NCBI RefSeq assembly: GCF_006345805.1
Contig: NC_042998.1
Span: forward strand, 16,988,001-17,052,000
Source of the DNA: Octopus sinensis
Lineage: Eukaryota
Reading direction: 5' to 3'
Length of the DNA: 64,000 nt
The notes beneath the pieces are model-generated. The model saw only the letters and a program-made list of their open reading frames with translations. It searched no databases and was not told the origin of the DNA. Numbering within the stretch: position 1 is the first letter of the stretch; each line of letters starts with the position of its first letter. This document shows positions 6,842 through 45,487 of this stretch, piece by piece. The position numbers and the translations under genes were made by a program.

Positions 6842-9769
6842 CACACGGTCATTTGTTTCATTGAGTATGTTTACGTGCGCAATCTAAATTCACTCATTTT
6901 ACTTTCACAGTTAAGTATTATAAGCTAAGCTAAAATAAAACGGAAGACGCTATAAATCTCAGAAGGATGAGAAATTTGTGAAATCTCATAATTTTGAGCC
7001 AAAAATTTCGAAACGTTTTTAAAATTATATCTCTGATTTACACATGTCTTTTACAGCATTTGTAAAATACAATATATGTTTAGATTCTATTTTTGCGTGT
7101 ATCGAAGCACTCAGTCTCTGCACATGAACCATTATTTGAATTAGAAGGGTAAATTAAAAAGATCACAGGGAAATAGCTGTTACACTAATAATTATTCAAC
7201 CAATGCATGAAAGCAAAGCCTAAAACATCAAAGACTCATCCCATTTTGCAATAGTTTCTTCAAACTGGATTCATTTTATAAAATACATAAGAAAAGCAAG
7301 CAACAAAACAAAATTACCATATGAATATGATAAAATTCCATTATTATTATTATTATTATTTCTTTATTTTAATTTTTTCCCAATGTGTTTCAGCACATTT
7401 TTTTGTTCAGTAAAAATGTTAATGCAAATCAACACATTTATGTCACCCTTTCAATTTGCTTAAACTAATGTGATTAAATTGCTTAATAAAGTTATTGCAG
7501 AAAACATGATTTTATAACAGGATTATGAAGCGTTCTTGTACGACTTGACAGTGATTCATATGTCAATATTCTCAATCTGATAATTCTGCTCAAATTGATT
7601 ATATAATGTAAAAGGATACCATCACATCACTTTCTAGAAAACTCGTTTTTTTTTTCATATTAGTTCTCACGTAAAGATACAGATTATCATCAAAATATAG
7701 ATTTCATTTAGGAACGCCGAACACAGCACACCACCGATGATAAATCCTGACAGAAATTTAGAAATAATTTTGGATAACTTCAAAATACTAACTTTTCGTT
7801 TCACTTGAGACTTTTGTTGGGATTCATGATTTAAAATTAGACTTTAAGTATTAAGAACAAAAAGTTATAACATGAAACATGTAAGGTGATGAAATTTTAA
7901 TCCATGACATATGATACATCATGCATTCGTCCAACGAAAATGTGCAAATGTCCTATGAATGTAACTCAACAAGACAGACCCTAATTTCAACTAAAAACTA
8001 TGGAATACGATAAGATTATGTTTAAGATGTATAAATTCATAGATGCGAACACGTTTAAAAGGTGGTTTTAGTACTCAAATTGTAAAATTATCAGAGTTTG
8101 CCAATCCTAAAATGCCAATAGTTTCACAATAAATTTGAACATTACTAGAGTATTCCTGTGCATACATTTAAAAGACCAATCAAATCTTTTCCCTCCGAGC
8201 TTATGTTACTGGAATTATTTTCTGTGCCTGTTGTATTGTAAGGCAAATTTACGTCTGTGTGTGTACTCGTAAATGTGTGTATATGTGTATGTGCCTGTGT
8301 GTAATTAAATAGAAGTCAACATATTCTCGATCAAATGAGTGATCTTAGAAGTATATAAGTAATACTTTTACATGTTGATGAAATTTAATTATATATTCTT
8401 GCCTTGCAATGAAATTAGACATGGTGTCTCGCTAATATCAGCATGTTAGTGAAATATTTATAACGTGCAAGTGTATTTATCTTGGAATTTTAAATGTTTA
8501 TGTGCAAATACACATACGTGGGCTTTTCTGGATTATGAAGAATGTAACACATATCAAACACTCTGAAATCAACGTAAAAGGTAGTATTATGTAACATTTT
8601 CTTTCGTTAATATTTTTGTGTTTACCTGCCATAACACGATGGTATGATGTGGACATTTTTGGATTGGAGTCATCAATATTACAGCACAAGCGGTCTGTTA
8701 ACCATCAAATCATACTCCATCATTATGAAAATAGAGAGATGTGTTTTATATTGCAGTCTGGAAATCAAAGCACAGGTTAGATCTGGAATACTTTGACGTT
8801 AGATTTATACGTTTATTTGTGCAGTCGGTGACTACCTATATAAGGAAAAAGAAAGAATATGCTTCCTGAAAGCTGTATTATAATTTTTTTTCTTCTGCAT
8901 AAATTGGGAGAAATATTAACATCAGGAATGCATTTGGCCACATCATTCATTTTATAAACTATATTTTTTTACATATCACATTAATTTAGACCATACTACA
9001 TACAACTACGACAATATGAAACAGATCGCAATCAAATAAGCTTATAAAACTAACTTTCCCAAAGCTATAAGGAGTAATATACCACAGTGACTTATGCCAC
9101 CTTTACAACTAAATCTATCATTCCATCACAGGATTTTCATGTAACCTTTCACGAAGATTCTATGTCAGTCTCCAAATATGGACGTATATTTCAGAGAATA
9201 GATGTTCCAAAGACCGACAGATAACCTTCTAAAATGCGTCAAAATCTCCCGGGAATACAAGTTCACTATTCTTGTGTATATTATATAACCATAAAAATGC
9301 TTCAAAGCGCTATTTCCATTCCTTACATTTCTCTAAATATGAGATTCAGAACTCAAAATCTTCATGCACACTCCGGTTTACTCGCGTTTTTTCGTGAATT
9401 CCAGTTAGATATCTTTCGCGGCATCCGATATACATACCAACTTACCAGTGCAAAATTCATACTATGATGTTTGCAGCAGGTTAGTAGTTACATCCTAAAA
9501 GTTCTACATACATTTTTCCATAACACGCAAATTGATACAAACCAACAACATTATTTCAAATTTAAAATATTTTTTTTCAAATTAAAACATTGCAAGTTAG
9601 AATATTCACATCATTCAGGTTGTCTAATTGCATTCAAATACTAAAATTTAATTTATATAATAATCTATGCACAGAAATTTATTTAATATGACAGAAAGGA
9701 CAGCGATAATAAACTGAATGGTTTAAATACTATAATATACTTATACACATATAATATTTTATCTCTCTT

Positions 9770-10039
9770 TGCTTTATCTCTTCCTTGCTTCAGTCATTTG
9801 ACTGCGGCCATATTACAGTACCTTATCAAATAATTTTAGTCGAATGAATTGATAACAGTCTATTTTTTTAACAAACCTACTACTTATTGCATCGGTTTCT
9901 TTTACGGAACTGCTAAGTAAAAGAAACGTAAACATATCATTACCGCTTGTCAAGTGGTTGCAGGGATCACCCACAAAGAGAAAGACCAGCGCACACGCAT
10001 ACACGCAAGCACGCACAAACAAAAACACACACGCATATA

Positions 10040-10107
<68 letters not shown>

Positions 10108-10207
10108 CAGGATTTGATTGGTCCGAGGCTATAGAAGAAGACGCTTGCCCAAGATGTCATGCAGCGAGTCTGGACACAAAGCATCTTACCGCATAGCCAC
10201 GCCTGTT
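9770..10207 (-). mobile_element. Diverged copy of the main tRNA-derived SINE (family 1)
   Basis: 3' tail CAGTCATTTGACTGCGGCCAT at about 9790-9812, decayed body at 9880-9960, and partly deleted head at 10110-10207. Confidence 0.65.
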
Positions 10208-10254
10208 CCAATAAATAATTAAATATGCACATAGGTATTATGTAGGTATACAAT

Positions 10255-10317
10255 GTATTTATATCTATCTAACTATATATCTCTTTGTTTATCTCTCTCT
10301 CTCTCTCTCTCTGTCTC

Positions 10318-10353
<36 letters not shown>

Positions 10354-10509
10354 CATGCATGCATGTATGTATGTATGTATGTATGTATGTATGTATGTAT
10401 GTATGTATGTATGTATAACTCTGTATATGCATTTGTTTGTCTATCTCTCTATCAATATATGTGTATATATTCATACATACATACATACATACATACATAC
10501 ATACATACA

Positions 10510-10540
<31 letters not shown>
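10255..10540. repeat. Compound (CT)n/(TATC)n/(TATG)n/(TACA)n microsatellite
   Basis: Direct inspection. Confidence 0.95.
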
Positions 10541-10541
<1 letters not shown>

Positions 10542-10682
10542 CATGTATATATAAGCATATCTCTGTCTGCGCGCGTATGTGATTGTGTGTTTGTGTGTGA
10601 ACATGTACATATCCACACACAAACATACACTCACACACTCATACACACACATACACACACACGTACGTGTATATATATATGC

Positions 10683-10720
<38 letters not shown>

Positions 10721-11460
10721 TTACATATATATATTGACAGAGAGAAAGACAAACAAATACAGATATAGATTTATTCTATTTAAACTGTATAAACTCTTTA
10801 TATGATCTTTTCTTCAAACTCAATAACATTCTTGGCATATATATTTCTTTTATATATTTATAGGATAAATGGAGATATATTTCAAAATATTGTAACTTAT
10901 TTAATCTTTTTTTCTTGAGCGTTCTATTATCTGTAGATATAAATTCAACAGAAAATATATATCCAAATCATATTTCATTTATAATCCGATCAATATATGT
11001 TTATGCTTAGTATAAGTTTCCTTTTTAACCTTTAATCATCTTCTATCACTTCTTTGAAGATTATTTTAATGCAGTTTTAAGTTGACGCAATGAAATGCAT
11101 TTTTAAGTAAGCAATAATTGCTTCTTTCTGAATACGTTCCATACTCGATAGTAAATATTTACCTAATATATATTTTTAACAATTGTATAAAGGTTGACCC
11201 TTTTCTTTCTGAAATGAGCCTTAGATAATGTGAGAAAGTCTTCTGCAAGACTCCTGAGGTAGGATATAGATGAATGGAACGTCAAACTTTTAGAAATCAT
11301 TTTGATGCAACGATAAAATATAAACGTCAAAATGGAATAAGAAGGAAAATACATCTTGTATAATTTCAAAGAAATTTTGTTCCAGCTAATATATGTATGT
11401 GTAGTAATATGAGCGCGCGTGCGTGTGCATAAGCATAAGCATATATATATATATATGTAT

Positions 11461-11995
11461 AGAAAATTTCCTCAGACTGTCATGGTTTAGGGGTTGTCAG
11501 CAATTAAGGACATGTGATGCCTCCTTACTGCTTTCCACAAGGCTTTAGAGTTAACTCTGCTGGCTACATTGAGGTCCTGGAAGTAATTGTTATGCCGTGG
11601 ATAGACAGTGTACGCAATGAAAGGTCACATGGGATTCAGTAGGGGTCTGCACTATAACACATGCCTCTAGTAACACAGGAATAAATGACTGAACATTTTT
11701 ATAATCACGTAACCCCTAGCATTTGGCCACCTATGTACCCAGGTCTCAATCCCTTACATGTGGAGTGTTGTTGAGAGATAAATTAATGAATACACCAATA
11801 ACACCAAAGATTTTTTGAAAACTGCCATAGTCAGAATAATGTCAAAAATGAACCAGGACCACTTGATTGGGAACATGTATATTATTTAGATTTCATATAG
11901 AAGCAGTTGTTGAAGCTGAAGGTGGCTTTATTGAATAACATTATAGAAAAGAAGGTTTATGTTTATACTCATAGCATTTTTTGATAAATAAAGTT
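11461..11995 (+). pseudogene. Tc1/mariner (DD37D/maT-like) transposase relic
   Basis: Reads KFPQTVMV*GVVSN*GHVMPPYCFPQGFRVNSAGYIEVLEVIVMPWIDSVRN...HVTPSIWPP..PGLNP with stops and frameshifts. Confidence 0.8.
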
Positions 11996-12059
11996 ACTTG
12001 TTATTATATATATGATTTTTAATAACCTTATATCTGTCCTCAAATAGCTTACGCAGCCT

Positions 12060-12585
<526 letters not shown>

Positions 12586-13465
12586 CAGAGGGGGCGAATA
12601 ATAATCTGTCGTCTAAATTACGCAAAAACCAGAATCTCCCCAGACACAAGAGAATAACGCTGACATCTCATTTTAAGAGATATAACGAAATAACGTTAAA
12701 GTATCTTGAAATATGAAAGATTATATTTATTTGATAAAATCGCCATTGGTTTCAACCACAGCCTCAAGACGCCTTTGGAAACTCCTGCAACTCTTCTGGA
12801 CTGTCTCGTTTTAGAAGTTGGTGAATGGTGCTTCTGTTCATATTTGGTGTTGCAAGGAGTTTTGTTGGTCTTTCGCTCTAATGTGCCCCACACATAATAA
12901 TCAAGAGAATTGCAGTCTGGGGAGTTAGGTGACCAGATTTTAGGGGGTGATGTTGTCGCAGTAAGTGTCTGACAGTCATGACTCGGTTCTCTAGCTTATG
13001 TGGCATGGTGCAGAGTCTGGTTGCCAAACATAGGGTCTTCCAGCAGTCACTCTGCTGACCCAGGACAGAACTAACTCTTCCAGGGACTTGATGTAGGTCT
13101 CCATGTTGGGTCTGAGGCCTTGTGGGACGATGAATGGAGCCACAGCGTTGCCATCCCTAGTGTTCACTCCAAACACATGATTTCAACTAGAAGTTTGAAA
13201 TTTATAACACCCGGTACAGGTCTTCAGGCTGCACTGTCCTCAGATTAGCATCCAAACACTGAAGTTTTAGTATTGGAGCTTTCGGCGCGAATTCGAAGCT
13301 GTACAGCATGTCGTTTCTAAATGTCTGCTTCATGGTGCTGTTTTTCTCACAGACCCTCCCCAACTGACCCTACTATAACGTGTAGTCGACAAAATCAAAA
13401 ATAAACAATGCACGTGCGCAAAATAAAAAGATATAAAATGGCGACAAATTATCCATCGCACCCTG
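12586..13465 (-). mobile_element. Internally deleted Tc1/mariner (DD37D-like) element with degenerate TIRs
   Basis: ORF 12991-13176 (FGVNTRDGNAVAPFIVPQGLRPN...GRPYVWQPDSAPCH) continues into WSPNSPDCNSLDYYVWGTLERKTNKTP. The ends CAGAGGGGGCGAATAATAATCTGTCG and CGACAAATTATCCATCGCACCCTG|TA are imperfect inverted repeats. Confidence 0.8.
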
Positions 13466-22915: not shown

Positions 22916-23988
22916 TCTTTATCCCCGTCTGTCTTGATAGACAATGGGTTGCGCCAAGGGTGGGGCCTACATTGATGATGTGCAGCGTCTGCTGTGACTG
23001 AACAGTCCAATTCTAGAGTGGCAGTCCTTGGTACAGTTGCTGCACACGAACATCGATGGGTACGTGTGGGGTGTTGCTGCAGTTGCCCTCCTCCTGTCCC
23101 GCCTGTCCAACCACAGCTGTGCTCTCCTCTCCTCAGCCATGGAAACGCCTTTTCTCACCGTCCGACGCCAGGCAGAGCGGTCAGCAGCTGTTTCCTCCCA
23201 CGTGTCCACACAGATGTTGGCAGTCCTCAGGTCGTGCTTGCACACGTCCCTGTATCGTAGCTGTGGACGTCCCTTGGGTCGGGATCCCATGGTGAGTTCG
23301 CTGTACAGGATGTCTTTAGGCATGCGACCGTCCTGCATGCGGCAGACGTGTCCGAGCCAGCGCAGGCGTCTCCCCACGAGGAGGGCATACATGCTTGGCA
23401 TATTAGTCTGTTCCAGGATGACTCCGTTTGGTACTCGGTCCTTCCAGGAGATGCCAAGGATCCGTCGAAGACACCGCATGTGGAAGCCGATGAGGCGGCA
23501 TTCCTGCCGGGTGTATGTTGTCCAGCTCTCGCTGCCGTAGAGTAGGGTGCTCAGCACGCAGGCTCGGTACACTGCGATCTTGGTGGTTATTGTGAGCATG
23601 TTGTTTTCCCACACTCTCCTGGAGAGCTTAGCCATGGCAGCAGCAGCCTTCCCAATCCGTCTGTCCAGCTCCGGCTCGAGGGACAGGCTGCTGGAGACCG
23701 TCGATCCCAGGTAAGTGAACTCGTTCACCACCTGCAAGCTGTGGTCGCCGACACTGATGCTGGGGACCCCTCCGACGTCCTGGCCCATGATCTCTGTCTT
23801 TTTCAGGCTTATGGTAAGGCCGAACTCTTGGCAGGCATCCGCCAGGGAGCTGACGAGCCTCTGGAGACCCGGTTGGTTGTGTGATGTTAGGGCGGCATCG
23901 TCAGCAAAGAGGATCTCTCTGATCAGCACCTGACGGACTTTGGTCTTAGCTCTGAGGCGCGCAAGATTGAACAATCCACCATCAGCGC
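22913..23988 (-). mobile_element. 5'-truncated RTE-clade LINE
   Basis: Carries the RT C-terminal half and a terminal zinc finger, then a short 3' UTR with a CCATTGTCTATCAAGACAGACGG stem-loop running into (TA)n. It is truncated just upstream of DGGLFNL. Confidence 0.92.
22967..23974 (-). CDS. RTE reverse transcriptase C-terminal fragment (335 aa, uninterrupted, no true start)
   Basis: LFADDAAL catalytic motif, [44 protein letters not shown], and C-terminal CxxC..H..RC finger. Confidence 0.9.
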
Positions 23989-24937: not shown

Positions 24938-24975
24938 AGCGCAGGAGTGGCTGTGTGGTAAGTAGCTTCTTACCA
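24938..24975 (+). mobile_element. 5' part of a family-1 SINE head (box A) ending in the left TSD
   Basis: AGCGCAGGAGTGGCTGTGTGGT then AAGTAGCTTCTTACCA (24960-24975). The SINE resumes at 27055. Confidence 0.9.
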
Positions 24976-25272
24976 GACAGACGTGCTGTTTTTTGCTCCG
25001 GCAAATGTCACGTGTTAACGTGAATTATTGAACATTTTACGGCAACAGGTAGGACATTTTGGATATTTTTGGAAGCATAGTGAGGTTTATTGCTTGCCGT
25101 TAATACATTTTGGCATTAATGTTAATTAGTGTTAACACTTTTCTACGCGTAATAAGCTTCACTTTGCTTCGGATGTATTTGTTCTGCCTGTTGGCGTATT
25201 TATTGTCTCACCTTTTAGTGAGAATTGTGTATTTTGAAGAGGCATAGCCCCTCCTCAAAAATTAATTTGTTC

Positions 25273-25359
25273 GCTTGGATTTACCACGGAGAACCAATTG
25301 TGCTTGTATTTATCACGGAGAACCAATTGTGCTTGGATTTACCACGGAGAACCAAGTGT
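25273..25359 (+). repeat. Three tandem 29-bp repeats in the 5' UTR
   Basis: GCTTGGATTTACCACGGAGAACCAATTGT three times with 1-2 changes and no spacers. Confidence 0.9.
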
Positions 25360-25527
25360 GCTGCAACTAGGAGTACCCTGTTTCGTGAGGATTACCAGTT
25401 GCAGAACTGTGTTGCCATTATTTGAACTGTCTTCCTTCGTCCTTTTCTCTGTTCTGTCTTTCTGTTCTGTCATTGTGTATTTTTCTTATTGGACTTTGAA
25501 CTTTTAGTTGAACTTTTTTTCAAAATC

Positions 25528-26730
25528 ATGGCAACAAAAGAAACCACTGCTTTGGAATGGGAGATTGTCCCACCCAAGCAGTGGATTGAAAGTCTTGAGA
25601 AGAGGACGGTGGTCCTACGAAGCTATTCTAGGTCGCGTGGAGCTATAGCCCTCTTCGACAGGAGCACCATAGAGAAAGAGCTGGGGGACCACCTACCAAC
25701 GATAAAGTTTATTTCTCGGGGGAGTAAATTTGCAACGGTGTGGTTGCTGTTTGGTACCCCCGAGGAAGGTAGCAGATTTGCTAGCGAGCCACTGGAGGGA
25801 GAGGAAATTTTGTTCCTCCCCTCGTATTGTGGCAGAAAAGTAAAAAGAGCCTGGGTTTGTGGGCTGCCCCCGGGCACGGAGGCGGAATGGATCGAGAAGA
25901 CCATCCGGCGAGGCCTGGGGGATAGCGGACCCAGGCTACTGAGTGTGAAAATGGCTCCCGCGGTCGCCTGGGAGGGGTCAAAGGCAACTTTGACCCTGTG
26001 GACACCGGTGGCCGTGGGAGAAATGAAATTCCCGGACTTCCTGAGAATGGCAGGGCACAGGTACCCGGTGCTACTCGAGGGACGCCCCCCCAAGTGTCAC
26101 CTGTGCCTGAAGCCCGGACATATCAAGAGGAATTGTCCCGGGGGCCGTAGTGGTGCCCCGGAGCATGAAGGGGAAAAGGCGCCCACCGCCCTCTCATTGG
26201 AGGGGGAGACGGTGGAAGTCGTGGAGGAGGTTGCCTCCACGAAAAGAAAGAGACAGGCGAGCAACAATGGCTGCTCGCCAAAGAACGCTCAGGTGGCGGA
26301 GGGGGATAGCGATCCCCCGAGTCTGGTGACGGAGTCCCCTGGGTCAGCAGTCTCCCCCAAAAGAAGGAGGAGAAAAAGAAAGAAAGGTCGGGCGGCTGAT
26401 ATCCATGAGCCGCAGACGTTGGCGGGAACTGTGCCGCCTTCGAAAGAACTGAACGTATTGGTCCTCTTCTATAGAGGAGGAGAAATTTTAAAAAAAATGA
26501 TGGACGAGTACCACAAGGGAGCTCCTTTAGCCTTCACACAGGACCCCGAATGGCCTCCGCAGATAGCTGTGGAGGCCGTGGCGTTCGACGTGATGCTTGG
26601 GCTAAAGGAGCTCAATGAAGATTATAGCTTGGTCCCGGGCGACGCGAACTCGGAACTTGATTACGTTCTGAGGGAGGCGTGTATGATGGTGGAGGGCGCC
26701 GGCACAAGCTATTTCGAGGACGATATGTAA
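25528..26730 (+). CDS. Gag/ORF1-like zinc-knuckle protein, 400 aa, intact
   Basis: ATG in context AAAATCATGG. Contains EGRPPKCHLCLKPGHIKRNCP (CX2CX4HX4C), an upstream region with RRM-like spacing (AWVCGLPPG), a basic NLS-like linker (KRRRRKRKKGR) and an acidic C-terminal domain. The architecture resembles L1/Tx1 ORF1 (inference). Confidence 0.8.
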   Translation: MATKETTALEWEIVPPKQWIESLEKRTVVLRSYSRSRGAIALFDRSTIEKELGDHLPTIKFISRGSKFATVWLLFGTPEEGSRFASEPLEGEEILFLPSYCGRKVKRAWVCGLPPGTEAEWIEKTIRRGLGDSGPRLLSVKMAPAVAWEGSKATLTLWTPVAVGEMKFPDFLRMAGHRYPVLLEGRPPKCHLCLKPGHIKRNCPGGRSGAPEHEGEKAPTALSLEGETVEVVEEVASTKRKRQASNNGCSPKNAQVAEGDSDPPSLVTESPGSAVSPKRRRRKRKKGRAADIHEPQTLAGTVPPSKELNVLVLFYRGGEILKKMMDEYHKGAPLAFTQDPEWPPQIAVEAVAFDVMLGLKELNEDYSLVPGDANSELDYVLREACMMVEGAGTSYFEDDM

Positions 26731-26747
26731 TTATTGAACTGTTAGTA

Positions 26748-26887
26748 TTAATAATGGACTGCTAAGTCCAAAAATTGGAAAATTGAAAGAGGTTTAATAC
26801 CTCGTCTTGCATTTTTATTAATAATGGACTGCTAAGTCCAAAAATTGGAAAAATTGTAAGAGGTTTAATACCTCGTTTTGTGTTTAT
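26748..26887 (+). repeat. Tandem 70-bp duplication in the 3' UTR of copy 1
   Basis: TTAATAATGGACTGCTAAGTCCAAAAATTGG... starts at 26748 and at 26818. It is single in copy 2. Confidence 0.9.
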
Positions 26888-27054
26888 CTTTAAAAAGAAC
26901 AATGTTTTAGAGAAGCGAAAGTCGGCGGGCGCTTTTTGTCTTCTCCCATCCTTATCATCTGTCTTTCATTATCATTCACTTCATTAACGTCCTCGTCCAG
27001 CCCGCAAAGCTAACTTAATCTGTGTACTGCCTTTATGGCAAATGTTTTGAAATA

Positions 27055-27440
27055 AAGTAGCTTGCTAACCAACCACATGGTCCCGGGTTCAGTCCCACTG
27101 CGTGGCATCTTGGGCAAGTGTCTTCTGCTATAGCCTCGGGCCGACCAATGCCTTGTGAGTGGATTTGGTAGACGGAAACTGAAAGAAACCAGTCGTATAT
27201 ATGTATATATATGTGTGGGTTTGTGTGTATGTGTTTGTGTGTCTGTGTTTGTCCCCCTAGCATTGCTTGACAACCGATGCTGGTGTGTTTACGTCCCCGT
27301 CACTTAGCGGTTCGGCAAAAGAGACCGATAGAATAAGTACTGGGCTTACAAAGAATAAGTACTGGGGGTATTTGCTCGACTAAAGGTGGTGCTCCATCAT
27401 GGCCGCAGTCAAGTGACTGAAACAAGTAAAAGAGAAAAGA
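27055..27440 (+). mobile_element. Remainder of the host family-1 SINE (right TSD, box B, body, tail)
   Basis: AAGTAGCTTGCTAACCAACCACATGGTCCCGGGTTCAGTCCC...GCCGCAGTCAAGTGACTGAAACAAGTAAAAGAG. Confidence 0.9.
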
Positions 27441-29669: not shown

Positions 29670-30070
29670 CAGAAGTGACTGTGTGGTAAGTAGCTTGCTT
29701 CCAAACCTCATGGTTCCGGGTTTAGTCCCACTGCGTGGCACCTTGGCCAAGTGTCTTCTACTATAGCCTCGGGCCGACCAATGCCTTCTGGTTGGATTTG
29801 GTAGATGGAAACTGAAAGAAGCCCGTCGTAAATACGTATACATTTTTATATGTATGTGTGCTTCTGTGTCAGTGTTTGTCCCCACCATCGCTTGACAACC
29901 AATGATAGTGTGTTTACGTCCCCGTAACTTAGCGGTTCGGCAAACGTGTCCGATAGAATAAGTACTAGGGTTACAAAGAATAAGTTCTGGGGTCGATTTT
30001 TTCAACTAAAGAGGCGGTACCCCAGCATGGCCGCAGTCAAATAACTGAAACAAGGAAAAGTATAAAAGAA
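29670..30070 (+). mobile_element. Family-1 tRNA-derived SINE, uninterrupted (empty target site)
   Basis: GTGACTGTGTGGTAAGTAGCTTGCTTCCAAACCTCATGGTTCCGGG; the target sequence is present once (29688-29702). Confidence 0.9.
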
Positions 30071-30649: not shown

Positions 30650-31017
30650 TACTCTTTTACTCTTTTACTTGTTTCAGTCATTTGACTGCGGCCATGCTGG
30701 AGCACCGCATTTAGTCGAGCAAATCGACCCCGGGACTTATTCTTTGTAAGCCCAGTACTTATTCTATCGGTCTCTTTTGCCGAACCGCTAAGTGACGGGG
30801 ACATAAACGCACCAGCATCGGTTGTCAGGCAATGCTTGGGGGACAAACACACACACACATACACATACATACGACAGGTTTCTTTCAGTTTCCGTCTACC
30901 AAATCCACTCACAAGGCATTGGTCGGCCCGGGGCTATAGCCCAAGATGCCACGCAGTGGGACTGAACCCGGAACCGTGTGGTTGGTTAGCAAGCTACTTA
31001 CCACACATCCACTCCTG
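30650..31017 (-). mobile_element. Family-1 SINE, uninterrupted (empty target site)
   Basis: Reverse complement of head, body and tail; site at 30985-30999. Confidence 0.9.
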
Positions 31018-38934: not shown

Positions 38935-39339
38935 CTCTTTTACTCTTTTACTCTTTTACTTGTTTCAGTCATTTTGACTGCGGCCATGCTGGAGCACCGC
39001 CTTTAGTCGAGCAAATCGACCCCGGGACTTATTCTTTGTAAGCCCAGTACTTATTCTATTGGTCTCTTTTGCCGAACCGCTAAGTGACGGGGACGTAAAC
39101 ACACCAGCATCGGTTGTCAAGTAATGCTAGTGGGACAAACACAGCAGACACACAAACACATACATATATATATATACATATAAACGACAGGCTTCTTTCA
39201 GTTTCCGTCTACCAAATCCACTCACAAGGCATTGGTCGGCCCGGGGCTATAGCTTGCCCAAGGCGCCACGCAGTGGGACTGAACCCGGGACCATGTGGTT
39301 GGTTAGCAAGCTACTTACCACACAGCCACTCCTACGCCT
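38935..39339 (-). mobile_element. Family-1 SINE, uninterrupted (empty target site)
   Basis: Minus strand AGGCGTAGGAGTGGCTGTGTGGTAAGTAGCTTGCTAACCAACCACATGG; site at 39302-39316. Confidence 0.9.
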
Positions 39340-39950: not shown

Positions 39951-39987
39951 AGCGCAGGAGTGGCTGTGTGGTAAGTAGCTTGGTTAC
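39951..39987 (+). mobile_element. 5' part of a family-1 SINE head ending in the left TSD
   Basis: AGCGCAGGAGTGGCTGTGTGGT then AAGTAGCTTGGTTAC (39973-39987). Confidence 0.9.
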
Positions 39988-40010
39988 AGGTTGCTTCTGC
40001 GCATGTGCGA

Positions 40011-40050
40011 GTCAGTGTTGTGTTTGGCACTGAAGCGGTGAAGACGTGCT
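40011..40050 (+). promoter_or_regulatory. Candidate internal Pol II promoter: Inr (TCAGT) plus DPE-like AGACGTG
   Basis: TCAGT at 40012-40016 and AGACGTGCT at 40042-40050 (about +29). The same AGACGTGCT lies 4 nt into copy 1 (24979-24987). Confidence 0.4.
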
Positions 40051-40606
40051 TTTGAAGCCGTCTTAAATTGAAAATTTTTGAAGCCCCATTGTAAGGTAAG
40101 ATTCTGTTTTCTGGGTCCAGTGGGAGTTTTTGTTGAAAATTGTTTTTTACAGGCAGGAAGTCCTACTGGATTCAGAATTCTGATTCTGCCGACATGGGGC
40201 AAATATATTTTTCTCGCTGAATTGTGAGAATTTTGGGGGGGCGTATTCGTCTTCGATAATTGAGTGAATATTTTTCTCACCTAATTATGAGAATTGTATT
40301 GTGCTGTGAAGAACTTTAAGAATTGTGAGAACTGTTATATAGGGGAGTGTTTTGCCTCCGAAGTTTGAACAATTTTTACCAATTTTACACCAATTTTTGT
40401 GGAAGTTGTGTTCCAGTTGCGGCGTTCCGGGTTCAATTTAGGCCGGGAGTACCGAATGGCCAGAAGGTTTTTGCTGTGTTATTGACTTTCTTTTTAACTT
40501 TATTTGACTTTCTCCTTTTTTGTTCATTGTGACTTTCTTCTGATTTCTTTTTCTTCTCGCTTTTTAAGTTTTATTTTGAATATATTTTAAAAAAGAAAAA
40601 AAAAAC

Positions 40607-41878
40607 ATGGCAATGAAAAATGACAAAGTTTTGGAATGGGAGATCATACCGCCTAAAAAGTGGTTAAAAGACCGTGAAGATAGGACGGTGGTGTTGAGAA
40701 CCTACTCCAAGTCACTCGACACCATCGCCCTGTTCGAAAAGACAGCAATTGAAAAGGAGTTGGCAGAGTATTTGCCAACAATTAAATTCATTTCCAGGGG
40801 TGTCAAATATGGAACGGTGTGGTTGCTATTTGACACCCCTGAAGAAGCTTGCAAATTTGCTAGTAAACCTCTGGAGGGTAAGGAAATTTTATTCCTGCCC
40901 ACGTACCAAAACAAAGAGACTGACGAAAGCTTGGATTTGCGGGCTGCCACCCGGGATAGAACCCGAGTGGATAGAGGAGACTATCCGCCGGGGTCTGGGT
41001 AGCAGCGAAACTAAGCTCCTTAATGTAAAAGTTCTTCCTGCGGCTGCTTGGGTTGGGTCAAAAGCAATTTTGACCCTTTGGACCCAATCAGCCAATCTGG
41101 TTCTTCCAGATTTTTTGAAAATGCCCGGGTGCAGGTACCCGGTGATGCTTGAGGGTCGCCCCCCTAAGTGTCATCGGTGCTTGGAGTCCGGCTATATAAA
41201 GAAGAACTGTCCCCGGAAACAAAATAGGATCCCGGAACAGTTAAGTGAAACCCCTGTAGAAGAGGGAATTATAACGGCTGAGGAAGCAGAGGACTCCTCA
41301 AACAGAGGCCGAAAGAGGAAGGTGAGCAACAATGGGTGCTCACCAAAGGATACTGGGGATGAGGAGGGAAAGGCGAATCTTCCGGCCACGGAGGAGACGC
41401 ACCCTCCCTCTGTTGAAAAGAAGAAAAAGAAAAAGAGGAAGAGAAACGGGACATTACCGGCTGTCGGTGACATACCACCGGAATGTCCCGGAACTACGTC
41501 GGTTGGGGTTGTGCCACCGACAGGAGAAGAAATACCGTTGGCGGGAACTGTGCTGCCAACGAAATAATTGAATATCCCGCACCCGAGCAAAACGAGGTAT
41601 TGATCCTCTTCCATAGAGGCGGAGAGATTGAAAAGGTGATGGAAAAGCACCACAAGGGAGCACCTTTAGCCTTCACACAGGACCCCGAATGGCCTCCGCA
41701 GGTAGCTGTGGAGGCCGTGGCGTTCGACGTGACGCTTGGACTGAAGGAGCTCAATGAGGATTATAGCTTGGAACTCGATTACGTTCTGAGGGAGGCGTTT
41801 TGGATGGTGGAGGATGCGGGAACAAGTTATTTCGAGGACGAGTCAAATTGTGATACAACTAGAGGGACCCCGACCTAG
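40607..41878 (+). pseudogene. Gag/ORF1-like zinc-knuckle ORF with two frameshifts
   Basis: Three overlapping ORF pieces (40607-, 40749-, 41483-) join into a homologue of 25528-26730. There is an apparent 1-nt insertion at about 40910 and a second shift near 41550-41570. Knuckle: EGRPPKCHRCLESGYIKKNCP (H replaced by Y). Confidence 0.85.
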
Positions 41879-42209
41879 AGCTGGCGCATTCCTAAGGGAG
41901 GTGTAAGCCAGGTCTGGGAGGAGGGGGATTTGTGTATTGTATTTATATATGTAATTATTGAACTATGTTGTTATTAGTAATGGACTGCTAAGTCCAAAAA
42001 TTGAAAAAATTGTAAGAGGCTTAATACCTCGTTTTGTGTTTGTTTTTAAAAGAACAATATTTTAGAGAAGCAGAAGTCGGCGGGCACTTTTTGTCTTCTC
42101 CCATCCCCATCATCTTTCTTTCATTATCATTCAGTTCATTAATGTCCTCGTCTAGCCCGCAAAGCTAACTTACTCTATGTACTGCCTTTATGGCAAATGT
42201 TATGAAATA

Positions 42210-42591
42210 AAGTAGCTTGTTTACCAACCACATGGTTCCGGGTTCAGTCCCACTGCGTGGCACCTTGGGAAAGTGTCTTCTACTATAGCCTCGGGCCGAC
42301 CAAAGCCTTGTCAGTGGATTTGGTAGACGGAAACTGAAAGAAGTCCGTCGTATATATGTATATATATATATATATGCGTGTGTGTGTTTGTGTGTCTGTG
42401 TTTCTCCGCCTAGCATTGCTTGACAACCGATGCTGATGTGTTTATATCCCCGTCACTTAGCGGTTCGGCAAAAGAGCCCGATAGAATAAGTACTGGGCTT
42501 ACAAACGAATAAGGCCCGGGGTCGAGTTGCTCGATTAAAGGCGGTGCTCCAGCATGGCCTCAGTCAAATGACTGAAACAAGTGAAAGAGTA
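42210..42591 (+). mobile_element. Remainder of the host family-1 SINE
   Basis: AAGTAGCTTGTTTACCAACCACATGGTTCCGGGTTCAGTCCC...GACTGAAACAAGTGAAAGAG. Confidence 0.9.
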
Positions 42592-45487
42592 CCTTAGGAG
42601 AATGAATATACCACAGCATAGCTTGGTTCATCATTGACTCAAATCCTCCACAGCAACGCCTGTATGCACTTGTTGGCTGTGTTTCATGGAATATTTACAA
42701 ATCCTGTTTATGTCCCTGCACAGTTATTAAACCAGAAACATGAAGTCCTCTCTGAGTGTGTCACCAAATTGTTTTCGTCATTCAACTTTTACCAGGGGTC
42801 TAATTGTAATTACGAACGAGAATTCACCTTCATTAGCTTTAATATAATGGGCATTTATTTCTAACATCACTATAACCACGTGAGCCCTAACTCTCCTCTC
42901 ACTTCAAGAAGTATCAAATTTTCTTTAGCTTTAGATCTTTATTATCTTTTACAACCGTTTATTACCATTACAGTCTTTTCCTCTTAATTTTGCCAACTAT
43001 GGGCAGCCTTGGTGGTCACCTAAAAGATGACACTATCTGACATTTTATACTCTTCATCCCTTTCTCTAGCCCAACCCATTCCGATATGCCACCCCCATTA
43101 TACTAACTAGTATATATCTACTTTACATCCACTTCTCAGTTTGTTCTCCACACTGTAGTATAATATTCCTAGTCAAACTTCATTCAATCTCGATTCAAAA
43201 GTGGAACTGGTAACTTCCTCTATTCCTTACCTTGGATTATCATTGAATATCATCAGCCGCTGCTGATGGGTATTACCTATGATTTTATTGTTCATTACGT
43301 CATGGGACTACGTAGGGGTTACCTATTTTAATATGACCCTTCCCCCATTTATAACAAGCTGGTGCGTACTAATATCCTCGACAGAGGATAGTCCCTCATT
43401 TTCACAGCTCTCTGATTTCTTCCGCTCTGTTGACAGTATACAGATCAGTAGACGTTGACTTAAATCGCGTATTTCGAGTATTTGCATGGAATACAGTATA
43501 AGGAATAAAGAAAAAACGTTATATGAAGCCTTTACATAACTTATTGTTTACTTTGTCCTGGAATCTCAACATTCCATTCCATGTAAGTACTTTAAGCGTA
43601 CTTGAGCTCATCTGCTTTTCTATATAATATTACGGCAAGTATCGTTCTTATGGCCAGCATTTCATGTCGGAGTGCTTGCCGTGGCTGAAGAGACTGGAGT
43701 TTAAGTTCTCATCCAATTGTGCATTACTTTATGATATCTATACCGAACTTACTTTTTCTGCATCTTGGCTGCGTTCATATATATATTTACATTGGATATT
43801 TCTAAAAGTATTTGTGTGTAATGTGCGAACGTTCGTGTGTGCCTGTATGTGGTTGTGTATGCGTGTGTGAGAGTGAAAGAGAAAGAGAGAGAGAGAGAGA
43901 AAGTGAGAGAGTATGTGTATGTATAATAATTAGGAGGAGTGAGAAATATGTCTACAGATGGACATATATTACCAATAAATGTTCGTAAGTTAAAAATATA
44001 AATGATAACGTTCTTGAGGTCGCTATCTTATTATTAGCGTCATCTCAAAAATACTTGATCAAATAGAGTAAAATATAAAGCAAAAGTGAAAATATAAAGA
44101 CCCTGTTAGGAAATGTTAATAGGGAAACTTAATTGATTGCCATCATTTCTTTATTGCAGTTCTTTTATTTGGTCTGACTCTTACTTCCTGAACAGTGTCG
44201 ACGTGTCTCCGATGAGACCGCTAATTATGTTGTATGTATTGGAGGGAAGTAAATACTGTTGAAGTTGGATTGCATAATATTCACATATCTCTATATGTGT
44301 CTGCTTGCAGTAAGTCCATAATAATGTCAGAACTGTCTCATGAATTACATTATGAATAATTTAAGCTTGTCGATAATCGCTTATGCAGCGCAGCACGAAA
44401 CTTTCTAACATAAGAGTATTTATATGACGCTGTAGGATACATAATAAGTTGATTTGTTCCCATTTGACATTTTCCAGATAAAACTTCTAAAGCATTTACA
44501 TAAAAATACACGCAGACATTTATATATGTTTAACAATAGCAATCGCCTCTTCCAATCTTATTTATTTAGAGATACATCTATTTAGATATTATACATCATT
44601 GAATATAACGATTTCATTCTACACATTACGTGCATATATAGTTGCTTCTATCCTCCAGAAAATATCATGATTAATGTTTTGGCTGTTATTTATAAGCACC
44701 GGTGTGTTTTCGTTACAAAAAGCAACAGAATGTGAATATTCAAAATGTATTAATTAAAAACGTGTTTGTTTTCTTTGGCATAATTCTGATAGTATTACGC
44801 TCCGGCATTAACCTTATTTATTCTGTAGTGTAATACCACCGCTCATGTAATTTCATACATTCAGTATAGACACTAAATTATATTTAGCTGTGGACTGAGA
44901 TTTATAAGCCTGAGGTTTATTTAATTAATAATATATTGCCTCAGCATTTCTTGACTATCTTTTATGTATTTTTTAAATTGCAATCTTTTCGTTCGTGTTG
45001 GTATCCTATATGACATAAATATACCAAATATAATGGAAGTATTTGGAAGTTGAGTAATTTAAGAAATGTATATATAGTCCGTCTCCTCTTCGGCCCTAAG
45101 GCTATATTTTGTAAATTTATTTCAGTTTGCTTCGTTTGATCACAGCCGTCTTCGTCTCCGTCCTCATCCGTCCACTAATTTGAATCATATTTATAGCACA
45201 TTTGTATGTAAACATTCTATATCGCATAGTTGTTTATTTCTCGTCTGTCGGTTCATTTTCTGACCTGATTTAAAAAAAATTGGCACGCTAATTTCCGTCG
45301 GTTGCAACTAGATAGGTATTCAATATTACCGTTAAGGCGCGAAATTGCGTTTGACACTCTGATTGATAATTGAGGAAAGGTTGGCTACCATCTGTGTCTG
45401 TTTTCAGTTTGTGCATTTATTATATGTTTGACTAATTATTTAATGCGAACGCTACGCTCTACCATATTTTTTTGTTATTTTTGATAA

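What the first reader, a model, noticed from the sequence alone, without database searches (positions are those of the whole stretch)
24938..27440. A protein-coding, RT-less retroelement that inserts site-specifically into a SINE's tRNA head
Seen: a family-1 SINE is split after its box A by a 2079-bp insert carrying one intact 400-aa zinc-knuckle ORF. The SINE segment AAGTAGCTTGCTTACCA is duplicated on both sides (24960-24975 and 27055-27071). The insert has no RT, LTRs or TIRs and ends in AATAA. A diverged homologue sits at the same nucleotide in another SINE copy (39988-42209), while SINE copies at 29670, 30650 and 38935 show the empty site. The implied bottom-strand nick is 5'-gctacTT/Acc-3'. 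Established: L1/Tx1 apurinic-type endonucleases nick at TT/A; Tx1-clade elements include families specific for multicopy RNA genes and other repeats; ORF1-only L1 derivatives (HAL1-type) exist. Inference: this is a non-autonomous Tx1/L1-like family, mobilised in trans, that uses an abundant SINE as a safe-harbour target. I do not know of this combination being described in cephalopods, but I cannot check the literature.
Basis: partly seen in the sequence, partly recalled or inferred. Interest (0 to 1): 0.92.

Follow-up and report, generated by a model that had tools for sequence, protein, structure and literature searches.

The report
ORF1-only retroelement targeting an octopus SINE
A 2.1-kb octopus retrotransposon keeps only the RNA-binding gene of a LINE and has no reverse transcriptase, and all three copies I could reach sit within the same 17 bases of an abundant SINE, so it looks like a parasite of a parasite that borrows another element's enzyme; each ingredient is a known kind, but I found no description of the combination.

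Summary
A 2079-bp insert (24976-27054) splits a SINE just after its box-A-like motif. It is flanked by a 16/17-bp duplication of SINE sequence and has no LTRs, TIRs or RT. It carries one intact 400-aa ORF.

A diverged, broken copy (39988-42209) has the identical 3' junction in another SINE at an unrelated locus. Three other SINE copies in the window show the empty site. A third copy, found only by protein homology in Octopus sinensis, also starts inside the same SINE-head segment.

The ORF is not LTR gag. A confident model shows RRM-RRM-CCHC, which is the Type I LINE ORF1p layout. Its homologues lie directly upstream of APE-RT ORF2s in Argonauta, O. vulgaris and an ENA contig (zf-RVT also detected in the first two). 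Those ORF2s match human L1 ORF2p best. The cephalopod relatives share a 3' tail motif with this element.

The RRM-CCHC region evolved at dN/dS about 0.13.

Best reading: an ORF2-less, L1/Tx1-like element mobilised in trans into one SINE site.

Not shown: the partner element, Tx1 clade membership, and genome-wide specificity (only three copies). I rate it a new variant of known kinds, of moderate interest.

The parts
24938..24975 (+). Host SINE, 5' part (box-A-like TGGCTGTGTGGTAA). The last 16 nt (24960-24975, AAGTAGCTTCTTACCA) are the left target-site duplication.
24976..25527 (+). 5' UTR of the insert (552 bp), with three 29-bp tandem repeats at 25273-25362. Barely alignable to copy 2. Its first bases resemble a stretch about 55 nt inside copy 2, so it may be slightly 5'-truncated.
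25528..26730 (+). Intact 400-aa ORF1-type gene. RRM1 is about aa 27-99 (25606-25824). RRM2 is about aa 105-183 (25840-26076). The CCHC knuckle is aa 189-204 (26092-26139). A basic, low-complexity linker follows, with KRRRRKRKKGR. An orphan C-terminal domain spans about aa 305-400 (26440-26727).
26731..27054 (+). 3' UTR (324 bp) with a 70-bp duplication (26746-26885). The terminal tail GCCTTTATGGCAAATGTTTTGAAATA(A) is at 27029-27054. The UTR is 92% identical to copy 2, and the tail motif is shared with autonomous cephalopod LINEs.
27055..27440 (+). Host SINE, remainder. The first 17 nt (27055-27071, AAGTAGCTTGCTAACCA) are the right target-site duplication. The box-B-like GGTTCAGTCCC follows.
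39951..39987 (+). Second host SINE, 5' part. The left TSD is AAGTAGCTTGGTTAC (39973-39987).
39988..42209 (+). Second, decayed copy of the element (2222 bp). ORF remnants span 40607-41878, with a +1 frameshift near 40915 and an in-frame stop at 41565-41567. There is an extra 106 bp before the shared TATGTAATTATTGAAC. It has the same 3' tail, ending GAAATA at 42209.
42210..42600 (+). Second host SINE, remainder. The right TSD AAGTAGCTTGTTTAC starts at 42210.
29670..30060 (+). Uninterrupted SINE copy (empty site).
30658..31017 (-). Uninterrupted SINE copy (empty site).
38949..39337 (-). Uninterrupted SINE copy (empty site).

Best explanation
This is a non-autonomous non-LTR retrotransposon. It descends from an L1-superfamily (probably Tx1-like) cephalopod LINE and keeps the 5' UTR, the ORF1 gene and the 3' UTR, but has no ORF2.

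Proposed mechanism, all inferred:
1. The element is transcribed and translated.
2. Its ORF1p (two RRMs, one CCHC knuckle, a basic linker and a private C-terminal domain) coats its own RNA.
3. The RNP borrows the APE endonuclease and reverse transcriptase of a related autonomous LINE, which recognises the conserved 3' tail (GCC-TTTAT-GGC hairpin, AAT...GAAATA).
4. The borrowed endonuclease nicks the bottom strand of the SINE head at about 5'-GCTACTT/ACC-3'.
5. The exposed ...TT-3' primes on the terminal A's of the RNA.
6. A top-strand cut 13-17 nt downstream gives the SINE-derived target-site duplication.

Shown: the anatomy; the ORF1 identity; absence of RT; the same site and orientation at three unrelated loci with different 5' junctions; empty sites; purifying selection on the RRM-CCHC part; the shared tail motif.

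Inferred: trans-mobilisation; which enzyme does the nicking; what sets the target choice (partner endonuclease and/or annealing of the RNA end to the target); transcription.
For: Anatomy and TSDs. No LTR or TIR.

ORF identity:
- The AF2 model of aa 7-206 has pLDDT 91.9.
- Its best structural matches are tandem-RRM proteins such as hnRNP A1 UP1 and IMP3 RRM12.
- A CCHC knuckle follows.
- This is the 'Type I ORF1p' layout which, in animals, is described as consistent with the Tx1 clade (PMC5203782).

Homology to LINE ORF1s:
- 34% identity, E = 3e-29, to O. vulgaris P0048.
- 25% identity, E = 2e-15, to Argonauta P0011.
- Both lie immediately upstream of ORF2s with Exo_endo_phos and/or RVT_1 plus zf-RVT.
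- A third case is on an ENA contig.
- The Argonauta ORF2 matches human L1 ORF2p over EN+RT at 4e-42, against R2 at 1e-19 over RT only.

The two cephalopod LINEs make 16-18-bp TSDs, lack poly(A) and end in CCCTTGTGG..AATAAAGAAAT. The window element ends in GCCTTTATGGCAAAT..GAAATA. Short non-autonomous Argonauta retroposons carry the same tail.

Independence of the copies:
- Flanks outside the SINEs are unrelated.
- The 5' junctions fall at SINE offsets 17, 15 and about 13 of the duplicated segment.
- The third copy (L001, O. sinensis) was retrieved by protein similarity only, so its flank was not pre-selected.

Selection: dN/dS is 0.12-0.14 in the RRM-CCHC region with dS of at least 1. It is about 0.5 in the linker and 0.24 in the C-terminal domain.

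Both informative copies have the same ORF1-to-3'UTR architecture despite about 30% divergence in the 5' half.
Against: - Only three copies could be examined, and the third has lost its 3' half and the rest of its host SINE.
- No autonomous partner was found. The closest autonomous relative whose insertion boundaries I mapped (34% ORF1 identity), and the Argonauta LINE, sit at unrelated, non-SINE targets. Site specificity is therefore not a general property of the group.
- The tail resemblance is about 18 of 26 positions, and the motif was defined after seeing the sequences.
- The TSD of copy 1 has two differences in 17 nt while its ORF is intact, which sits a little uneasily with a neutral old insertion.
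- The C-terminal domain has no detectable relatives, so the ORF is not simply a standard ORF1.
- No evidence of transcription or current activity was available.
Confidence: 0.6

Rival explanations
1. Sporadic deletion derivatives. An autonomous, SINE-specific L1/Tx1-like LINE exists, and the copies here are ordinary dead copies that lost ORF2. There is no self-propagating ORF1-only lineage.
For: Internal deletions are common in LINE copies. A 106-bp indel sits exactly where ORF2 would be expected. The 3' module is much younger than the 5' module (dS 0.30 vs at least 1.0). That would fit repeated derivation from, or recombination with, an active autonomous master.
Against: Two copies that differ by about 30% in the ORF 5' half share the same ORF-stop-to-3'UTR junction sequence on both sides of the indel. 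The ORF2-less architecture therefore predates their divergence, and both then inserted independently. No ORF2 remnant is detectable in either copy.
Confidence: 0.17
2. Composite amplification. One ancient insertion into one SINE created a SINE-head / element / SINE-body composite, which was then copied as a unit. The shared 'site' would then be inherited, not targeted.
For: The host SINE bodies of copies 1 and 2 are 89.8% identical, similar to the adjoining 3' UTRs at 91.8%.
Against: The three 5' junctions lie at different SINE nucleotides (...TTACCA|...GGTTAC|...GCTT|), with different element 5' ends. The O. sinensis host head is a different variant (GGCTGAGGCATGG vs AGCGCAGGAGTGG). An unrelated empty SINE (38949-39337) is just as similar (88.4%) to copy 1's host. 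The 2.4-kb composite contains T-runs that would stop Pol III, and box B is displaced by 2 kb (inference).
Confidence: 0.1
3. RNA-level chimera. Reverse transcriptase copying a SINE RNA switched template to the element RNA and back, giving a retro-copied SINE-element-SINE chimera. The apparent TSD is then an overlap of the two switch points.
For: Template-switch chimeras are known for L1-type RTs (established knowledge). The structure seen, with a duplicated 13-17-nt SINE segment, could in principle arise this way.
Against: It requires two switches per event, with the 3' switch at exactly the same nucleotide in independent events. A 13-18-nt duplication is exactly what the related autonomous LINEs produce at ordinary genomic targets.
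Confidence: 0.05
4. Host or domesticated gene. Copy 1 is a LINE-derived RRM-CCHC gene kept by the octopus for its own use and only incidentally embedded in a SINE.
For: The ORF is intact although its TSD carries 2 differences in 17 nt. There is strong purifying selection between family members. A relative is annotated as a gene model in O. sinensis (LOC115225585).
Against: The gene is intronless, flanked by TSDs inside a repeat, and has decayed paralogues at other loci with the same junction. dN/dS between transposing lineages reflects selection for transposition as readily as host function. Only one close protein relative was found among billions of predicted proteins.
Confidence: 0.04

Closest known systems
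Target-specific Tx1-clade LINEs: Tx1L in the piggyBac element Tx1D, Tx1-Mar in Mariner-N4_AMi, Keno in U2 snRNA genes, Mutsu in 5S rDNA, Dewa in the tRNA-Leu spacer (PMC4494074, PMC3706591)
   Same: APE-type, L1-superfamily elements that insert at one defined position of a multicopy sequence, often another transposon, in a fixed orientation, with TSDs and without a long poly(A). ORF1 is of the RRM + CCHC type. Non-autonomous passengers (SINEU) share the partner's target.
   Different: This element has no ORF2, so it cannot encode the endonuclease that sets specificity in Tx1 elements. The target is the head of a box-A/box-B SINE, which I did not find described. Clade membership could not be tested. 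The autonomous relatives I mapped are not in this target.
HAL1 ('half-L1') of mammals (Smit 1999; Bao & Jurka 2010, as cited in PMC5753468)
   Same: A non-autonomous LINE derivative that encodes only ORF1p, arose from an L1-superfamily element and is presumed to use ORF2p in trans.
   Different: HAL1 carries the mammalian Type II ORF1p (coiled coil-RRM-CTD), has a poly(A) tail and inserts without site specificity. This element has a Type I ORF1p with an extra orphan C-terminal domain, a specific non-poly(A) tail and one recurrent target.
Autonomous cephalopod L1-like LINEs found here: Argonauta hians BAAFZT010000045.1 (L002:~7817-13244) and O. vulgaris OX597832.1 (L003:8706-13849). 'L1-Tx1' families are reported active in O. 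vulgaris (PMC13282606).
   Same: Homologous ORF1 core (25-34% identity), similar TSD length (16-18 vs 13-17 nt), no poly(A), and a related 3' tail motif.
   Different: They carry a full or decayed APE-RT-zf-RVT ORF2, a different ORF1 C-terminus, and lie at unrelated targets.
Stringent-type SINE/LINE partnerships through a shared 3' tail (Kajikawa & Okada 2002, as cited in PMC4494074)
   Same: A non-autonomous element carrying the partner LINE's 3' tail for recognition by its RT.
   Different: This passenger is 2 kb long, protein-coding and presumably Pol II-transcribed, rather than a short Pol III SINE.

Membership tests
Non-LTR (LINE-type) retrotransposon derivative | Insertion flanked by a target-site duplication, with no LTRs or TIRs and a defined 3' end | tested here: met
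   16/17-nt and 15-nt TSDs of SINE sequence. No terminal repeats. Identical 3' end in copies 1 and 2.
Non-LTR (LINE-type) retrotransposon derivative | The encoded protein is homologous to ORF1 proteins that sit upstream of an APE-RT ORF2 | tested here: met
   E = 3e-29 to P0048 and 2e-15 to P0011. ORF2 with Exo_endo_phos, RVT_1 and zf-RVT lies directly downstream in L002 and L003. Exo_endo_phos and RVT_1 lie downstream in L007.
Type I ORF1p (Khazina & Weichenrieder classification) | At least one RRM followed by a CCHC zinc knuckle | tested here: met
   The AF2 model (pLDDT 91.9) shows two RRM folds. CCHC at aa 189-204. Definition taken from PMC5203782.
Autonomous LINE | Encodes a reverse transcriptase (and an endonuclease) | tested here: not met
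   The only ORF of at least 80 aa on the sense strand is the 400-aa ORF1. No RVT or Exo_endo_phos hit. The same holds for copy 2.
L1 superfamily | APE + RT + C-terminal CCHC (zf-RVT) ORF2 that groups with L1 rather than other clades | tested here: inconclusive
   Testable only on relatives. The Argonauta ORF2 hits human L1 ORF2p at 4e-42 over EN+RT, against R2 at 1e-19, and zf-RVT is present. No RT phylogeny with reference clades was possible.
Tx1 clade | RT-domain phylogeny places the element within Tx1 | not testable with these tools
   The element has no RT, and no Repbase or RTclass1 reference set was available. 'L1-Tx1' families are reported in octopus genomes (PMC13282606, PMC8967140), but no link to this family was shown.
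Tx1 clade | Target-sequence specificity across the copies of a family | tested here: inconclusive
   3 of 3 reachable copies lie in the same 17-nt SINE segment and orientation. The 3' junction was verified in 2. A genome-wide census was not possible.
HAL1 | ORF1-only derivative of an L1-superfamily LINE | tested here: met
HAL1 | Mammalian L1 Type II ORF1p (Transposase_22) and a poly(A) tail | tested here: not met
   No Transposase_22 hit. RRM-RRM-CCHC instead. The element ends in GAAATA(A), not poly(A). It is therefore an analogue of HAL1, not a member.
LTR-retrotransposon gag | Capsid/nucleocapsid gag adjacent to pol, with LTRs | tested here: not met
   No LTRs. Only the 18-aa knuckle resembles retroviral NC. 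The rest is tandem RRM. Homologues neighbour APE-RT, not protease or integrase.
SINE | Short, non-coding, with an internal Pol III promoter head | tested here: not met
   The insert is 2079 bp and protein-coding, with T-runs near its 5' end.
tRNA-derived SINE (the target) | The head is recognisable as a tRNA | tested here: inconclusive
   ARAGORN finds no tRNA in the window. Rfam gives no tRNA hit on an intact head. Box-A-like TGGCTGTGTGGTAA and box-B-like GGTTCAGTCCC motifs are present. tRNA-derived octopus SINEs are on record (Ohshima & Okada 1994, cited in PMC4758252).

The most novel reading that the evidence does not exclude
The ORF1-only element is a long-lived, self-sustaining lineage. 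Its own parts help choose the target: its ORF1p with the orphan C-terminal domain, and/or annealing of its RNA 3' end (or co-transcribed SINE sequence) to the nicked SINE. Site specificity would then be carried by a passenger that encodes no endonuclease, riding on a partner LINE that is not itself SINE-specific.
Probability: 0.12. Interest if true: 0.75.

Novelty: new variant of a known kind. Interest (0 to 1): 0.45.

Why it matters
If a genome-wide census confirms it, this would be a protein-coding, RT-less retroelement that has kept a functional ORF1 under purifying selection while inserting at one nucleotide of another retroposon.

It would extend the list of Tx1-type 'safe-harbour' targets to a SINE, the most abundant repeat class in octopus genomes.

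It would give a natural system for two open questions: why some non-autonomous LINE derivatives need their own ORF1p, and where target specificity resides when the endonuclease is supplied in trans.

It also matters practically. Such nested copies will be mis-annotated as genes (LOC115225585 and the chimeric XP_029639579.1 are examples) or as fragmented SINEs.

Tried and rejected
- Word-indexed protein searches found only one close relative. A search with a full-length alignment was swamped by low-complexity linkers. The trimmed core alignment worked better.
- Looking up the window ORF by exact sequence in assemblies found nothing on record.
- A scan of JGI metagenome contigs with the 22-nt 3' tail gave three hits. 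The one I inspected (L004) was a chance match with no flanking similarity. No route to further octopus copies remained.
- The C-terminal domain (aa ~300-400) has no hit in the exhaustive search. It shows no profile similarity to the conserved C-termini of other family members (hhalign probability 0.1). It has no tblastn hit to relatives' ORF2s or anywhere else in the window. The idea that it is a fused ORF2 C-terminus or the family's usual ORF1 C-terminal domain is therefore unsupported.
- The single-sequence AF2 model of the whole ORF was useless (pLDDT 36.8).
- I aligned the extra 106 bp of copy 2 to the start of the LINE 3' UTRs to look for an ORF2-deletion scar. The result was not convincing.
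- ARAGORN and Rfam did not recognise the SINE head as a tRNA.
- Segmental duplication of the two window copies is rejected, because the flanks are unrelated.
- LTR gag is rejected.
Full report
OBSERVATION

A SINE copy starts at 24938 and is interrupted after ...GGTAAGTAGCTTCTTACCA (24975). It resumes at 27055 with AAGTAGCTTGCTAACCAACCACATGG.... The 2079 bp in between (24976-27054) contain a 552-bp 5' UTR with three 29-bp tandem repeats. They also contain one intact ORF (25528-26730, 400 aa from the ATG) and a 324-bp 3' UTR with a 70-bp duplication.

There are no terminal direct or inverted repeats, and nothing resembles a reverse transcriptase or endonuclease. The duplicated SINE segment is 16 vs 17 nt with two differences. 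Because the element ends in A's and the duplication starts with AA, the element's last base and the implied nick are uncertain by 0-2 nt.

A second copy lies at 39988-42209 in another SINE. Its 3' junction is at the identical SINE nucleotide (...TGAAATA|AAGTAGCTTG). Its left duplication ends 2 nt earlier (AAGTAGCTTGGTTAC). Its ORF is broken by a frameshift near 40915 and a stop at 41565.

SINE copies at 29670-30060(+), 30658-31017(-) and 38949-39337(-) read GGTAAGTAGCTTGCT(T/A)ACCAACC without interruption, so they are empty sites. Sequence outside the two host SINEs is unrelated, so the two filled sites are not a segmental duplication.

WHAT THE ORF IS

Pfam sees only a sub-threshold CCHC knuckle at aa 189-204. 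An exhaustive HMMER search found 41 relatives. All match aa ~10-215, and all those I looked up that carry an organism name are from cephalopods (Octopus bimaculoides, O. vulgaris, O. sinensis, Argonauta hians).

I modelled aa 7-206 with an alignment of the conserved core. The model is confident (pLDDT 91.9) and consists of two consecutive beta-alpha-beta domains. Its best structural matches are tandem-RRM proteins (hnRNP A1 UP1, IMP3 RRM12, raver1). The zinc knuckle follows. RRM(s) plus CCHC is the 'Type I ORF1p' layout of non-LTR retrotransposons. In animals this layout is described as consistent with the Tx1 group of the L1 clade (PMC5203782).

Genomic context settles the matter:
- The Argonauta homologue P0011 (25% identity, E = 2e-15) ends 39 bp upstream of an ORF2 with Exo_endo_phos, RVT_1 and zf-RVT domains.
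- The O. vulgaris homologue P0048 (34% identity, E = 3e-29) is followed by a decayed RVT_1/zf-RVT ORF2.
- An ENA-contig homologue is followed by Exo_endo_phos and RVT_1 genes.
- The Argonauta ORF2 aligns with human L1 ORF2p across endonuclease and RT (E = 4e-42). It matches R2 proteins only in the RT (about 1e-19).

The ORF is therefore a LINE ORF1 of an L1-superfamily group, not LTR gag and not an ordinary host gene.

The last ~100 aa form a separate region, predicted helical only at low confidence, with no detectable relative.

RELATIVES AND THE 3' TAIL

I mapped the boundaries of the two autonomous cephalopod LINEs. The Argonauta element has the TSD TCTTCAACTTATGTTT. The O. vulgaris element has the TSD GTGTGTTTCTTAAATGGC. 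Both lack poly(A). They end in GCCCTTGTGGCGAATAAAGAAATG and CCCCTTGTGGGTAATAAAGAAATA respectively.

The window element ends in GCCTTTATGGCAAATGTTTTGAAATA(A). It has the same small GCC...GGC hairpin followed by AAT...GAAAT. Two short non-coding retroposon copies in the Argonauta locus end in GCCCTTGTGGC(A/T)AATAGAGAAATC. In this LINE group the tail is therefore demonstrably shared with non-autonomous passengers.

This is the evidence for trans-mobilisation. It is suggestive rather than strong, because the resemblance is about 18 of 26 positions and I defined the motif after seeing the sequences. Neither autonomous relative lies in a SINE head, so the recurrent SINE site is a property of this family or its unknown partner, not of the group as a whole.

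INDEPENDENT INSERTIONS AT ONE SITE

The only close protein relative in the databases, O. sinensis LOC115225585 (59% identity), was fetched with its flanks (L001). Although it was found by protein similarity alone, its 5' end abuts ...GGCATGGCTGTGTGGTAAGTAGCTTGCTT|CCTGTGCATGCG. That is the same SINE-head segment and the same orientation. Its 3' half and the rest of its host SINE are lost.

The three 5' junctions fall at different SINE nucleotides, giving duplications of 17, 15 and about 13 nt. The O. sinensis and copy-2 elements begin with CTG(C/T)GCATG. Copy 1 begins with a stretch resembling about position 55 of copy 2. The host heads are different variants.

A fixed 3' junction with variable TSD length and variable 5' ends is the signature of repeated target-primed reverse transcription at one bottom-strand nick. 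A single composite copied as a unit would share one 5' junction.

As a rough bound (my arithmetic, not a tool result), all SINEs together make up 11.6% of the O. vulgaris genome (PMC13282606). One defined nucleotide and orientation per ~400-bp copy therefore has a chance of at most 1.5e-4 per random insertion. Two further copies matching the first have a chance of at most about 2e-8.

Three copies is still a small sample. I could not obtain more.

SELECTION AND MOSAIC HISTORY

Codon-wise comparison of the three copies gives dN/dS of 0.12-0.14 for the RRM-CCHC region, with dS of 1.0-1.8 (saturated for one pair). The basic linker gives about 0.5. The C-terminal domain gives 0.24 with dS of only 0.30.

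The ORF1 core has thus been under purifying selection while the subfamilies diverged. From about 26417 (copy 1) / 41536 (copy 2) onward, identity jumps from 55-70% to 82-92%. The 3' module (C-terminal domain plus 3' UTR) is therefore much younger than the 5' module. That points to recombination or replacement, as expected if a passenger must keep up with its partner's tail.

Copies 1 and 2 share the sequence on both sides of the ORF-stop/3'UTR boundary, apart from a 106-bp indel. The ORF2-less architecture therefore predates their split, and both lineages inserted afterwards.

MECHANISM

Shown:
- the anatomy;
- LINE ORF1 identity;
- no RT or endonuclease;
- the same site and orientation at three loci, with empty sites nearby;
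- TSDs of the same length class as the autonomous relatives;
- selection on ORF1;
- the shared tail motif.

Inferred:
- the element is transcribed (probably by Pol II, since T-runs and the 2-kb displacement of box B argue against Pol III);
- its ORF1p packages its own RNA in cis;
- an ORF2p from a related autonomous LINE recognises the 3' tail, nicks the SINE head at about 5'-GCTACTT/ACC-3' on the bottom strand and primes on the terminal A's;
- a staggered top-strand cut 13-17 nt downstream yields the duplication.

Whether the partner's endonuclease, RNA-target annealing or ORF1p sets the target is open.

COMPARISON WITH KNOWN SYSTEMS

The element works like two known things at once.

First, it resembles Tx1-clade LINEs. 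These insert at fixed positions of multicopy sequences, including other transposons: Tx1L in Tx1D, Tx1-Mar in Mariner-N4_AMi, and others in LTR and Harbinger elements. Small-RNA loci are also hit: Keno, Mutsu, and Dewa in the tRNA-Leu spacer. Non-autonomous SINEU elements share the target of their Tx1-Mar partners (PMC4494074; PMC3706591).

Second, it resembles mammalian HAL1, an L1 derivative that encodes only ORF1p (PMC5753468).

Membership is a different matter:
- It is a LINE-derived element with a Type I ORF1p (tested, met).
- It is not autonomous (tested).
- It is not a HAL1 member, because it has a different ORF1 type and no poly(A).
- Tx1 membership cannot be tested without an RT.

My text searches found no description of an ORF1-only target-specific element or of a SINE head as a LINE target. 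The searchable library is incomplete, however, and Repbase reports are not covered.

VERDICT

The finding is best described as a new variant built from known kinds: a Tx1-like target-specific insertion combined with a HAL1-like ORF1-only architecture. Its supposed site specificity rests on three copies.

Interest is moderate (0.45). A TE specialist would find it a neat, publishable family rather than a surprise, unless specificity turns out to be carried by the passenger itself.

This is an octopus transposon, and nothing here touches the operators' restrictions.

Noticed in passing
window 53440-56730 (+): A separate LINE. A 284-aa upstream ORF is followed by an RT ORF (RVT_1, E = 2.8e-27) and then an ORF with a weak, sub-threshold zf-RVT-like CCHC match (E = 3.9e-4). 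A related fragment at L003:14099-14878 carries an RPDIV...D...K stretch that by eye recalls restriction-like-endonuclease (R4/Dong-type) LINEs. I did not classify it.
   Followed up: partly
window 22967-23974 (-): A 335-aa ORF that is the C-terminal part of another reverse transcriptase (RVT_1 positions 147-204) with a Cys/His-rich end. It is a 5'-truncated LINE copy about 1 kb upstream of the host SINE, and it accounts for the local GC rise to 0.46.
   Followed up: partly
window 26417-27054 vs 41536-42209: Identity between the two element copies switches sharply from 55-70% to 82-92% inside the ORF. The C-terminal domain plus 3' UTR form a much younger module than the 5' UTR plus RRM region (dS 0.30 vs at least 1.0). 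This suggests recombination or module replacement.
   Followed up: partly
window 41854-41959: Copy 2 has 106 extra bp between the end of the ORF and the shared TATGTAATTATTGAAC. This may be the scar of ORF2 loss. Alignment to the 3' UTRs of the autonomous relatives was inconclusive.
   Followed up: partly
L002:4513-4540 and L002:7109-7136 (Argonauta hians): Two short non-coding retroposon copies end in GCCCTTGTGGC(A/T)AATAGAGAAATC. This is the same tail as the Argonauta LINE at L002:13220, so there is a SINE/LINE tail partnership in this LINE group.
   Followed up: partly
window 27400-27440 and 42560-42600: The host SINE's own tail (...CATGGCCGCAGTCAAATGACTGAAACAAGTAAAAGAG) loosely resembles the element's tail (...TTATGGCAAATGTTTTGAAATAA). 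If the resemblance is real, SINE and passenger might depend on related LINEs. Not tested.
   Followed up: no
L003:7063-8232 (O. vulgaris): A host-type SINE is split in its microsatellite core by about 750 bp. The inserted stretch contains a perfect long palindrome (7255-7465) and a second, different SINE with clear box A/B motifs (GGCGCAATGGCCCAGTGGTTAGGG...GGTTTCGATTCCC). This shows heavy nesting of repeats in SINE microsatellite cores.
   Followed up: no
P0023 = XP_029639579.1 (O. sinensis), aa 83-128: This annotated 'K02A2.6-like' protein is a chimeric gene model. It fuses 46 aa nearly identical to the N-terminus of the copy-2-type element ORF to an integrase-like sequence. It is probably a fourth element copy disrupted by an LTR element.
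   Followed up: no
window 24960-24975 vs 27055-27071: The TSD of copy 1 differs at 2 of 17 positions, yet the 1.2-kb ORF is intact. This could be chance, an error-prone 5' junction, or selection on this copy. It remains unresolved.
   Followed up: no
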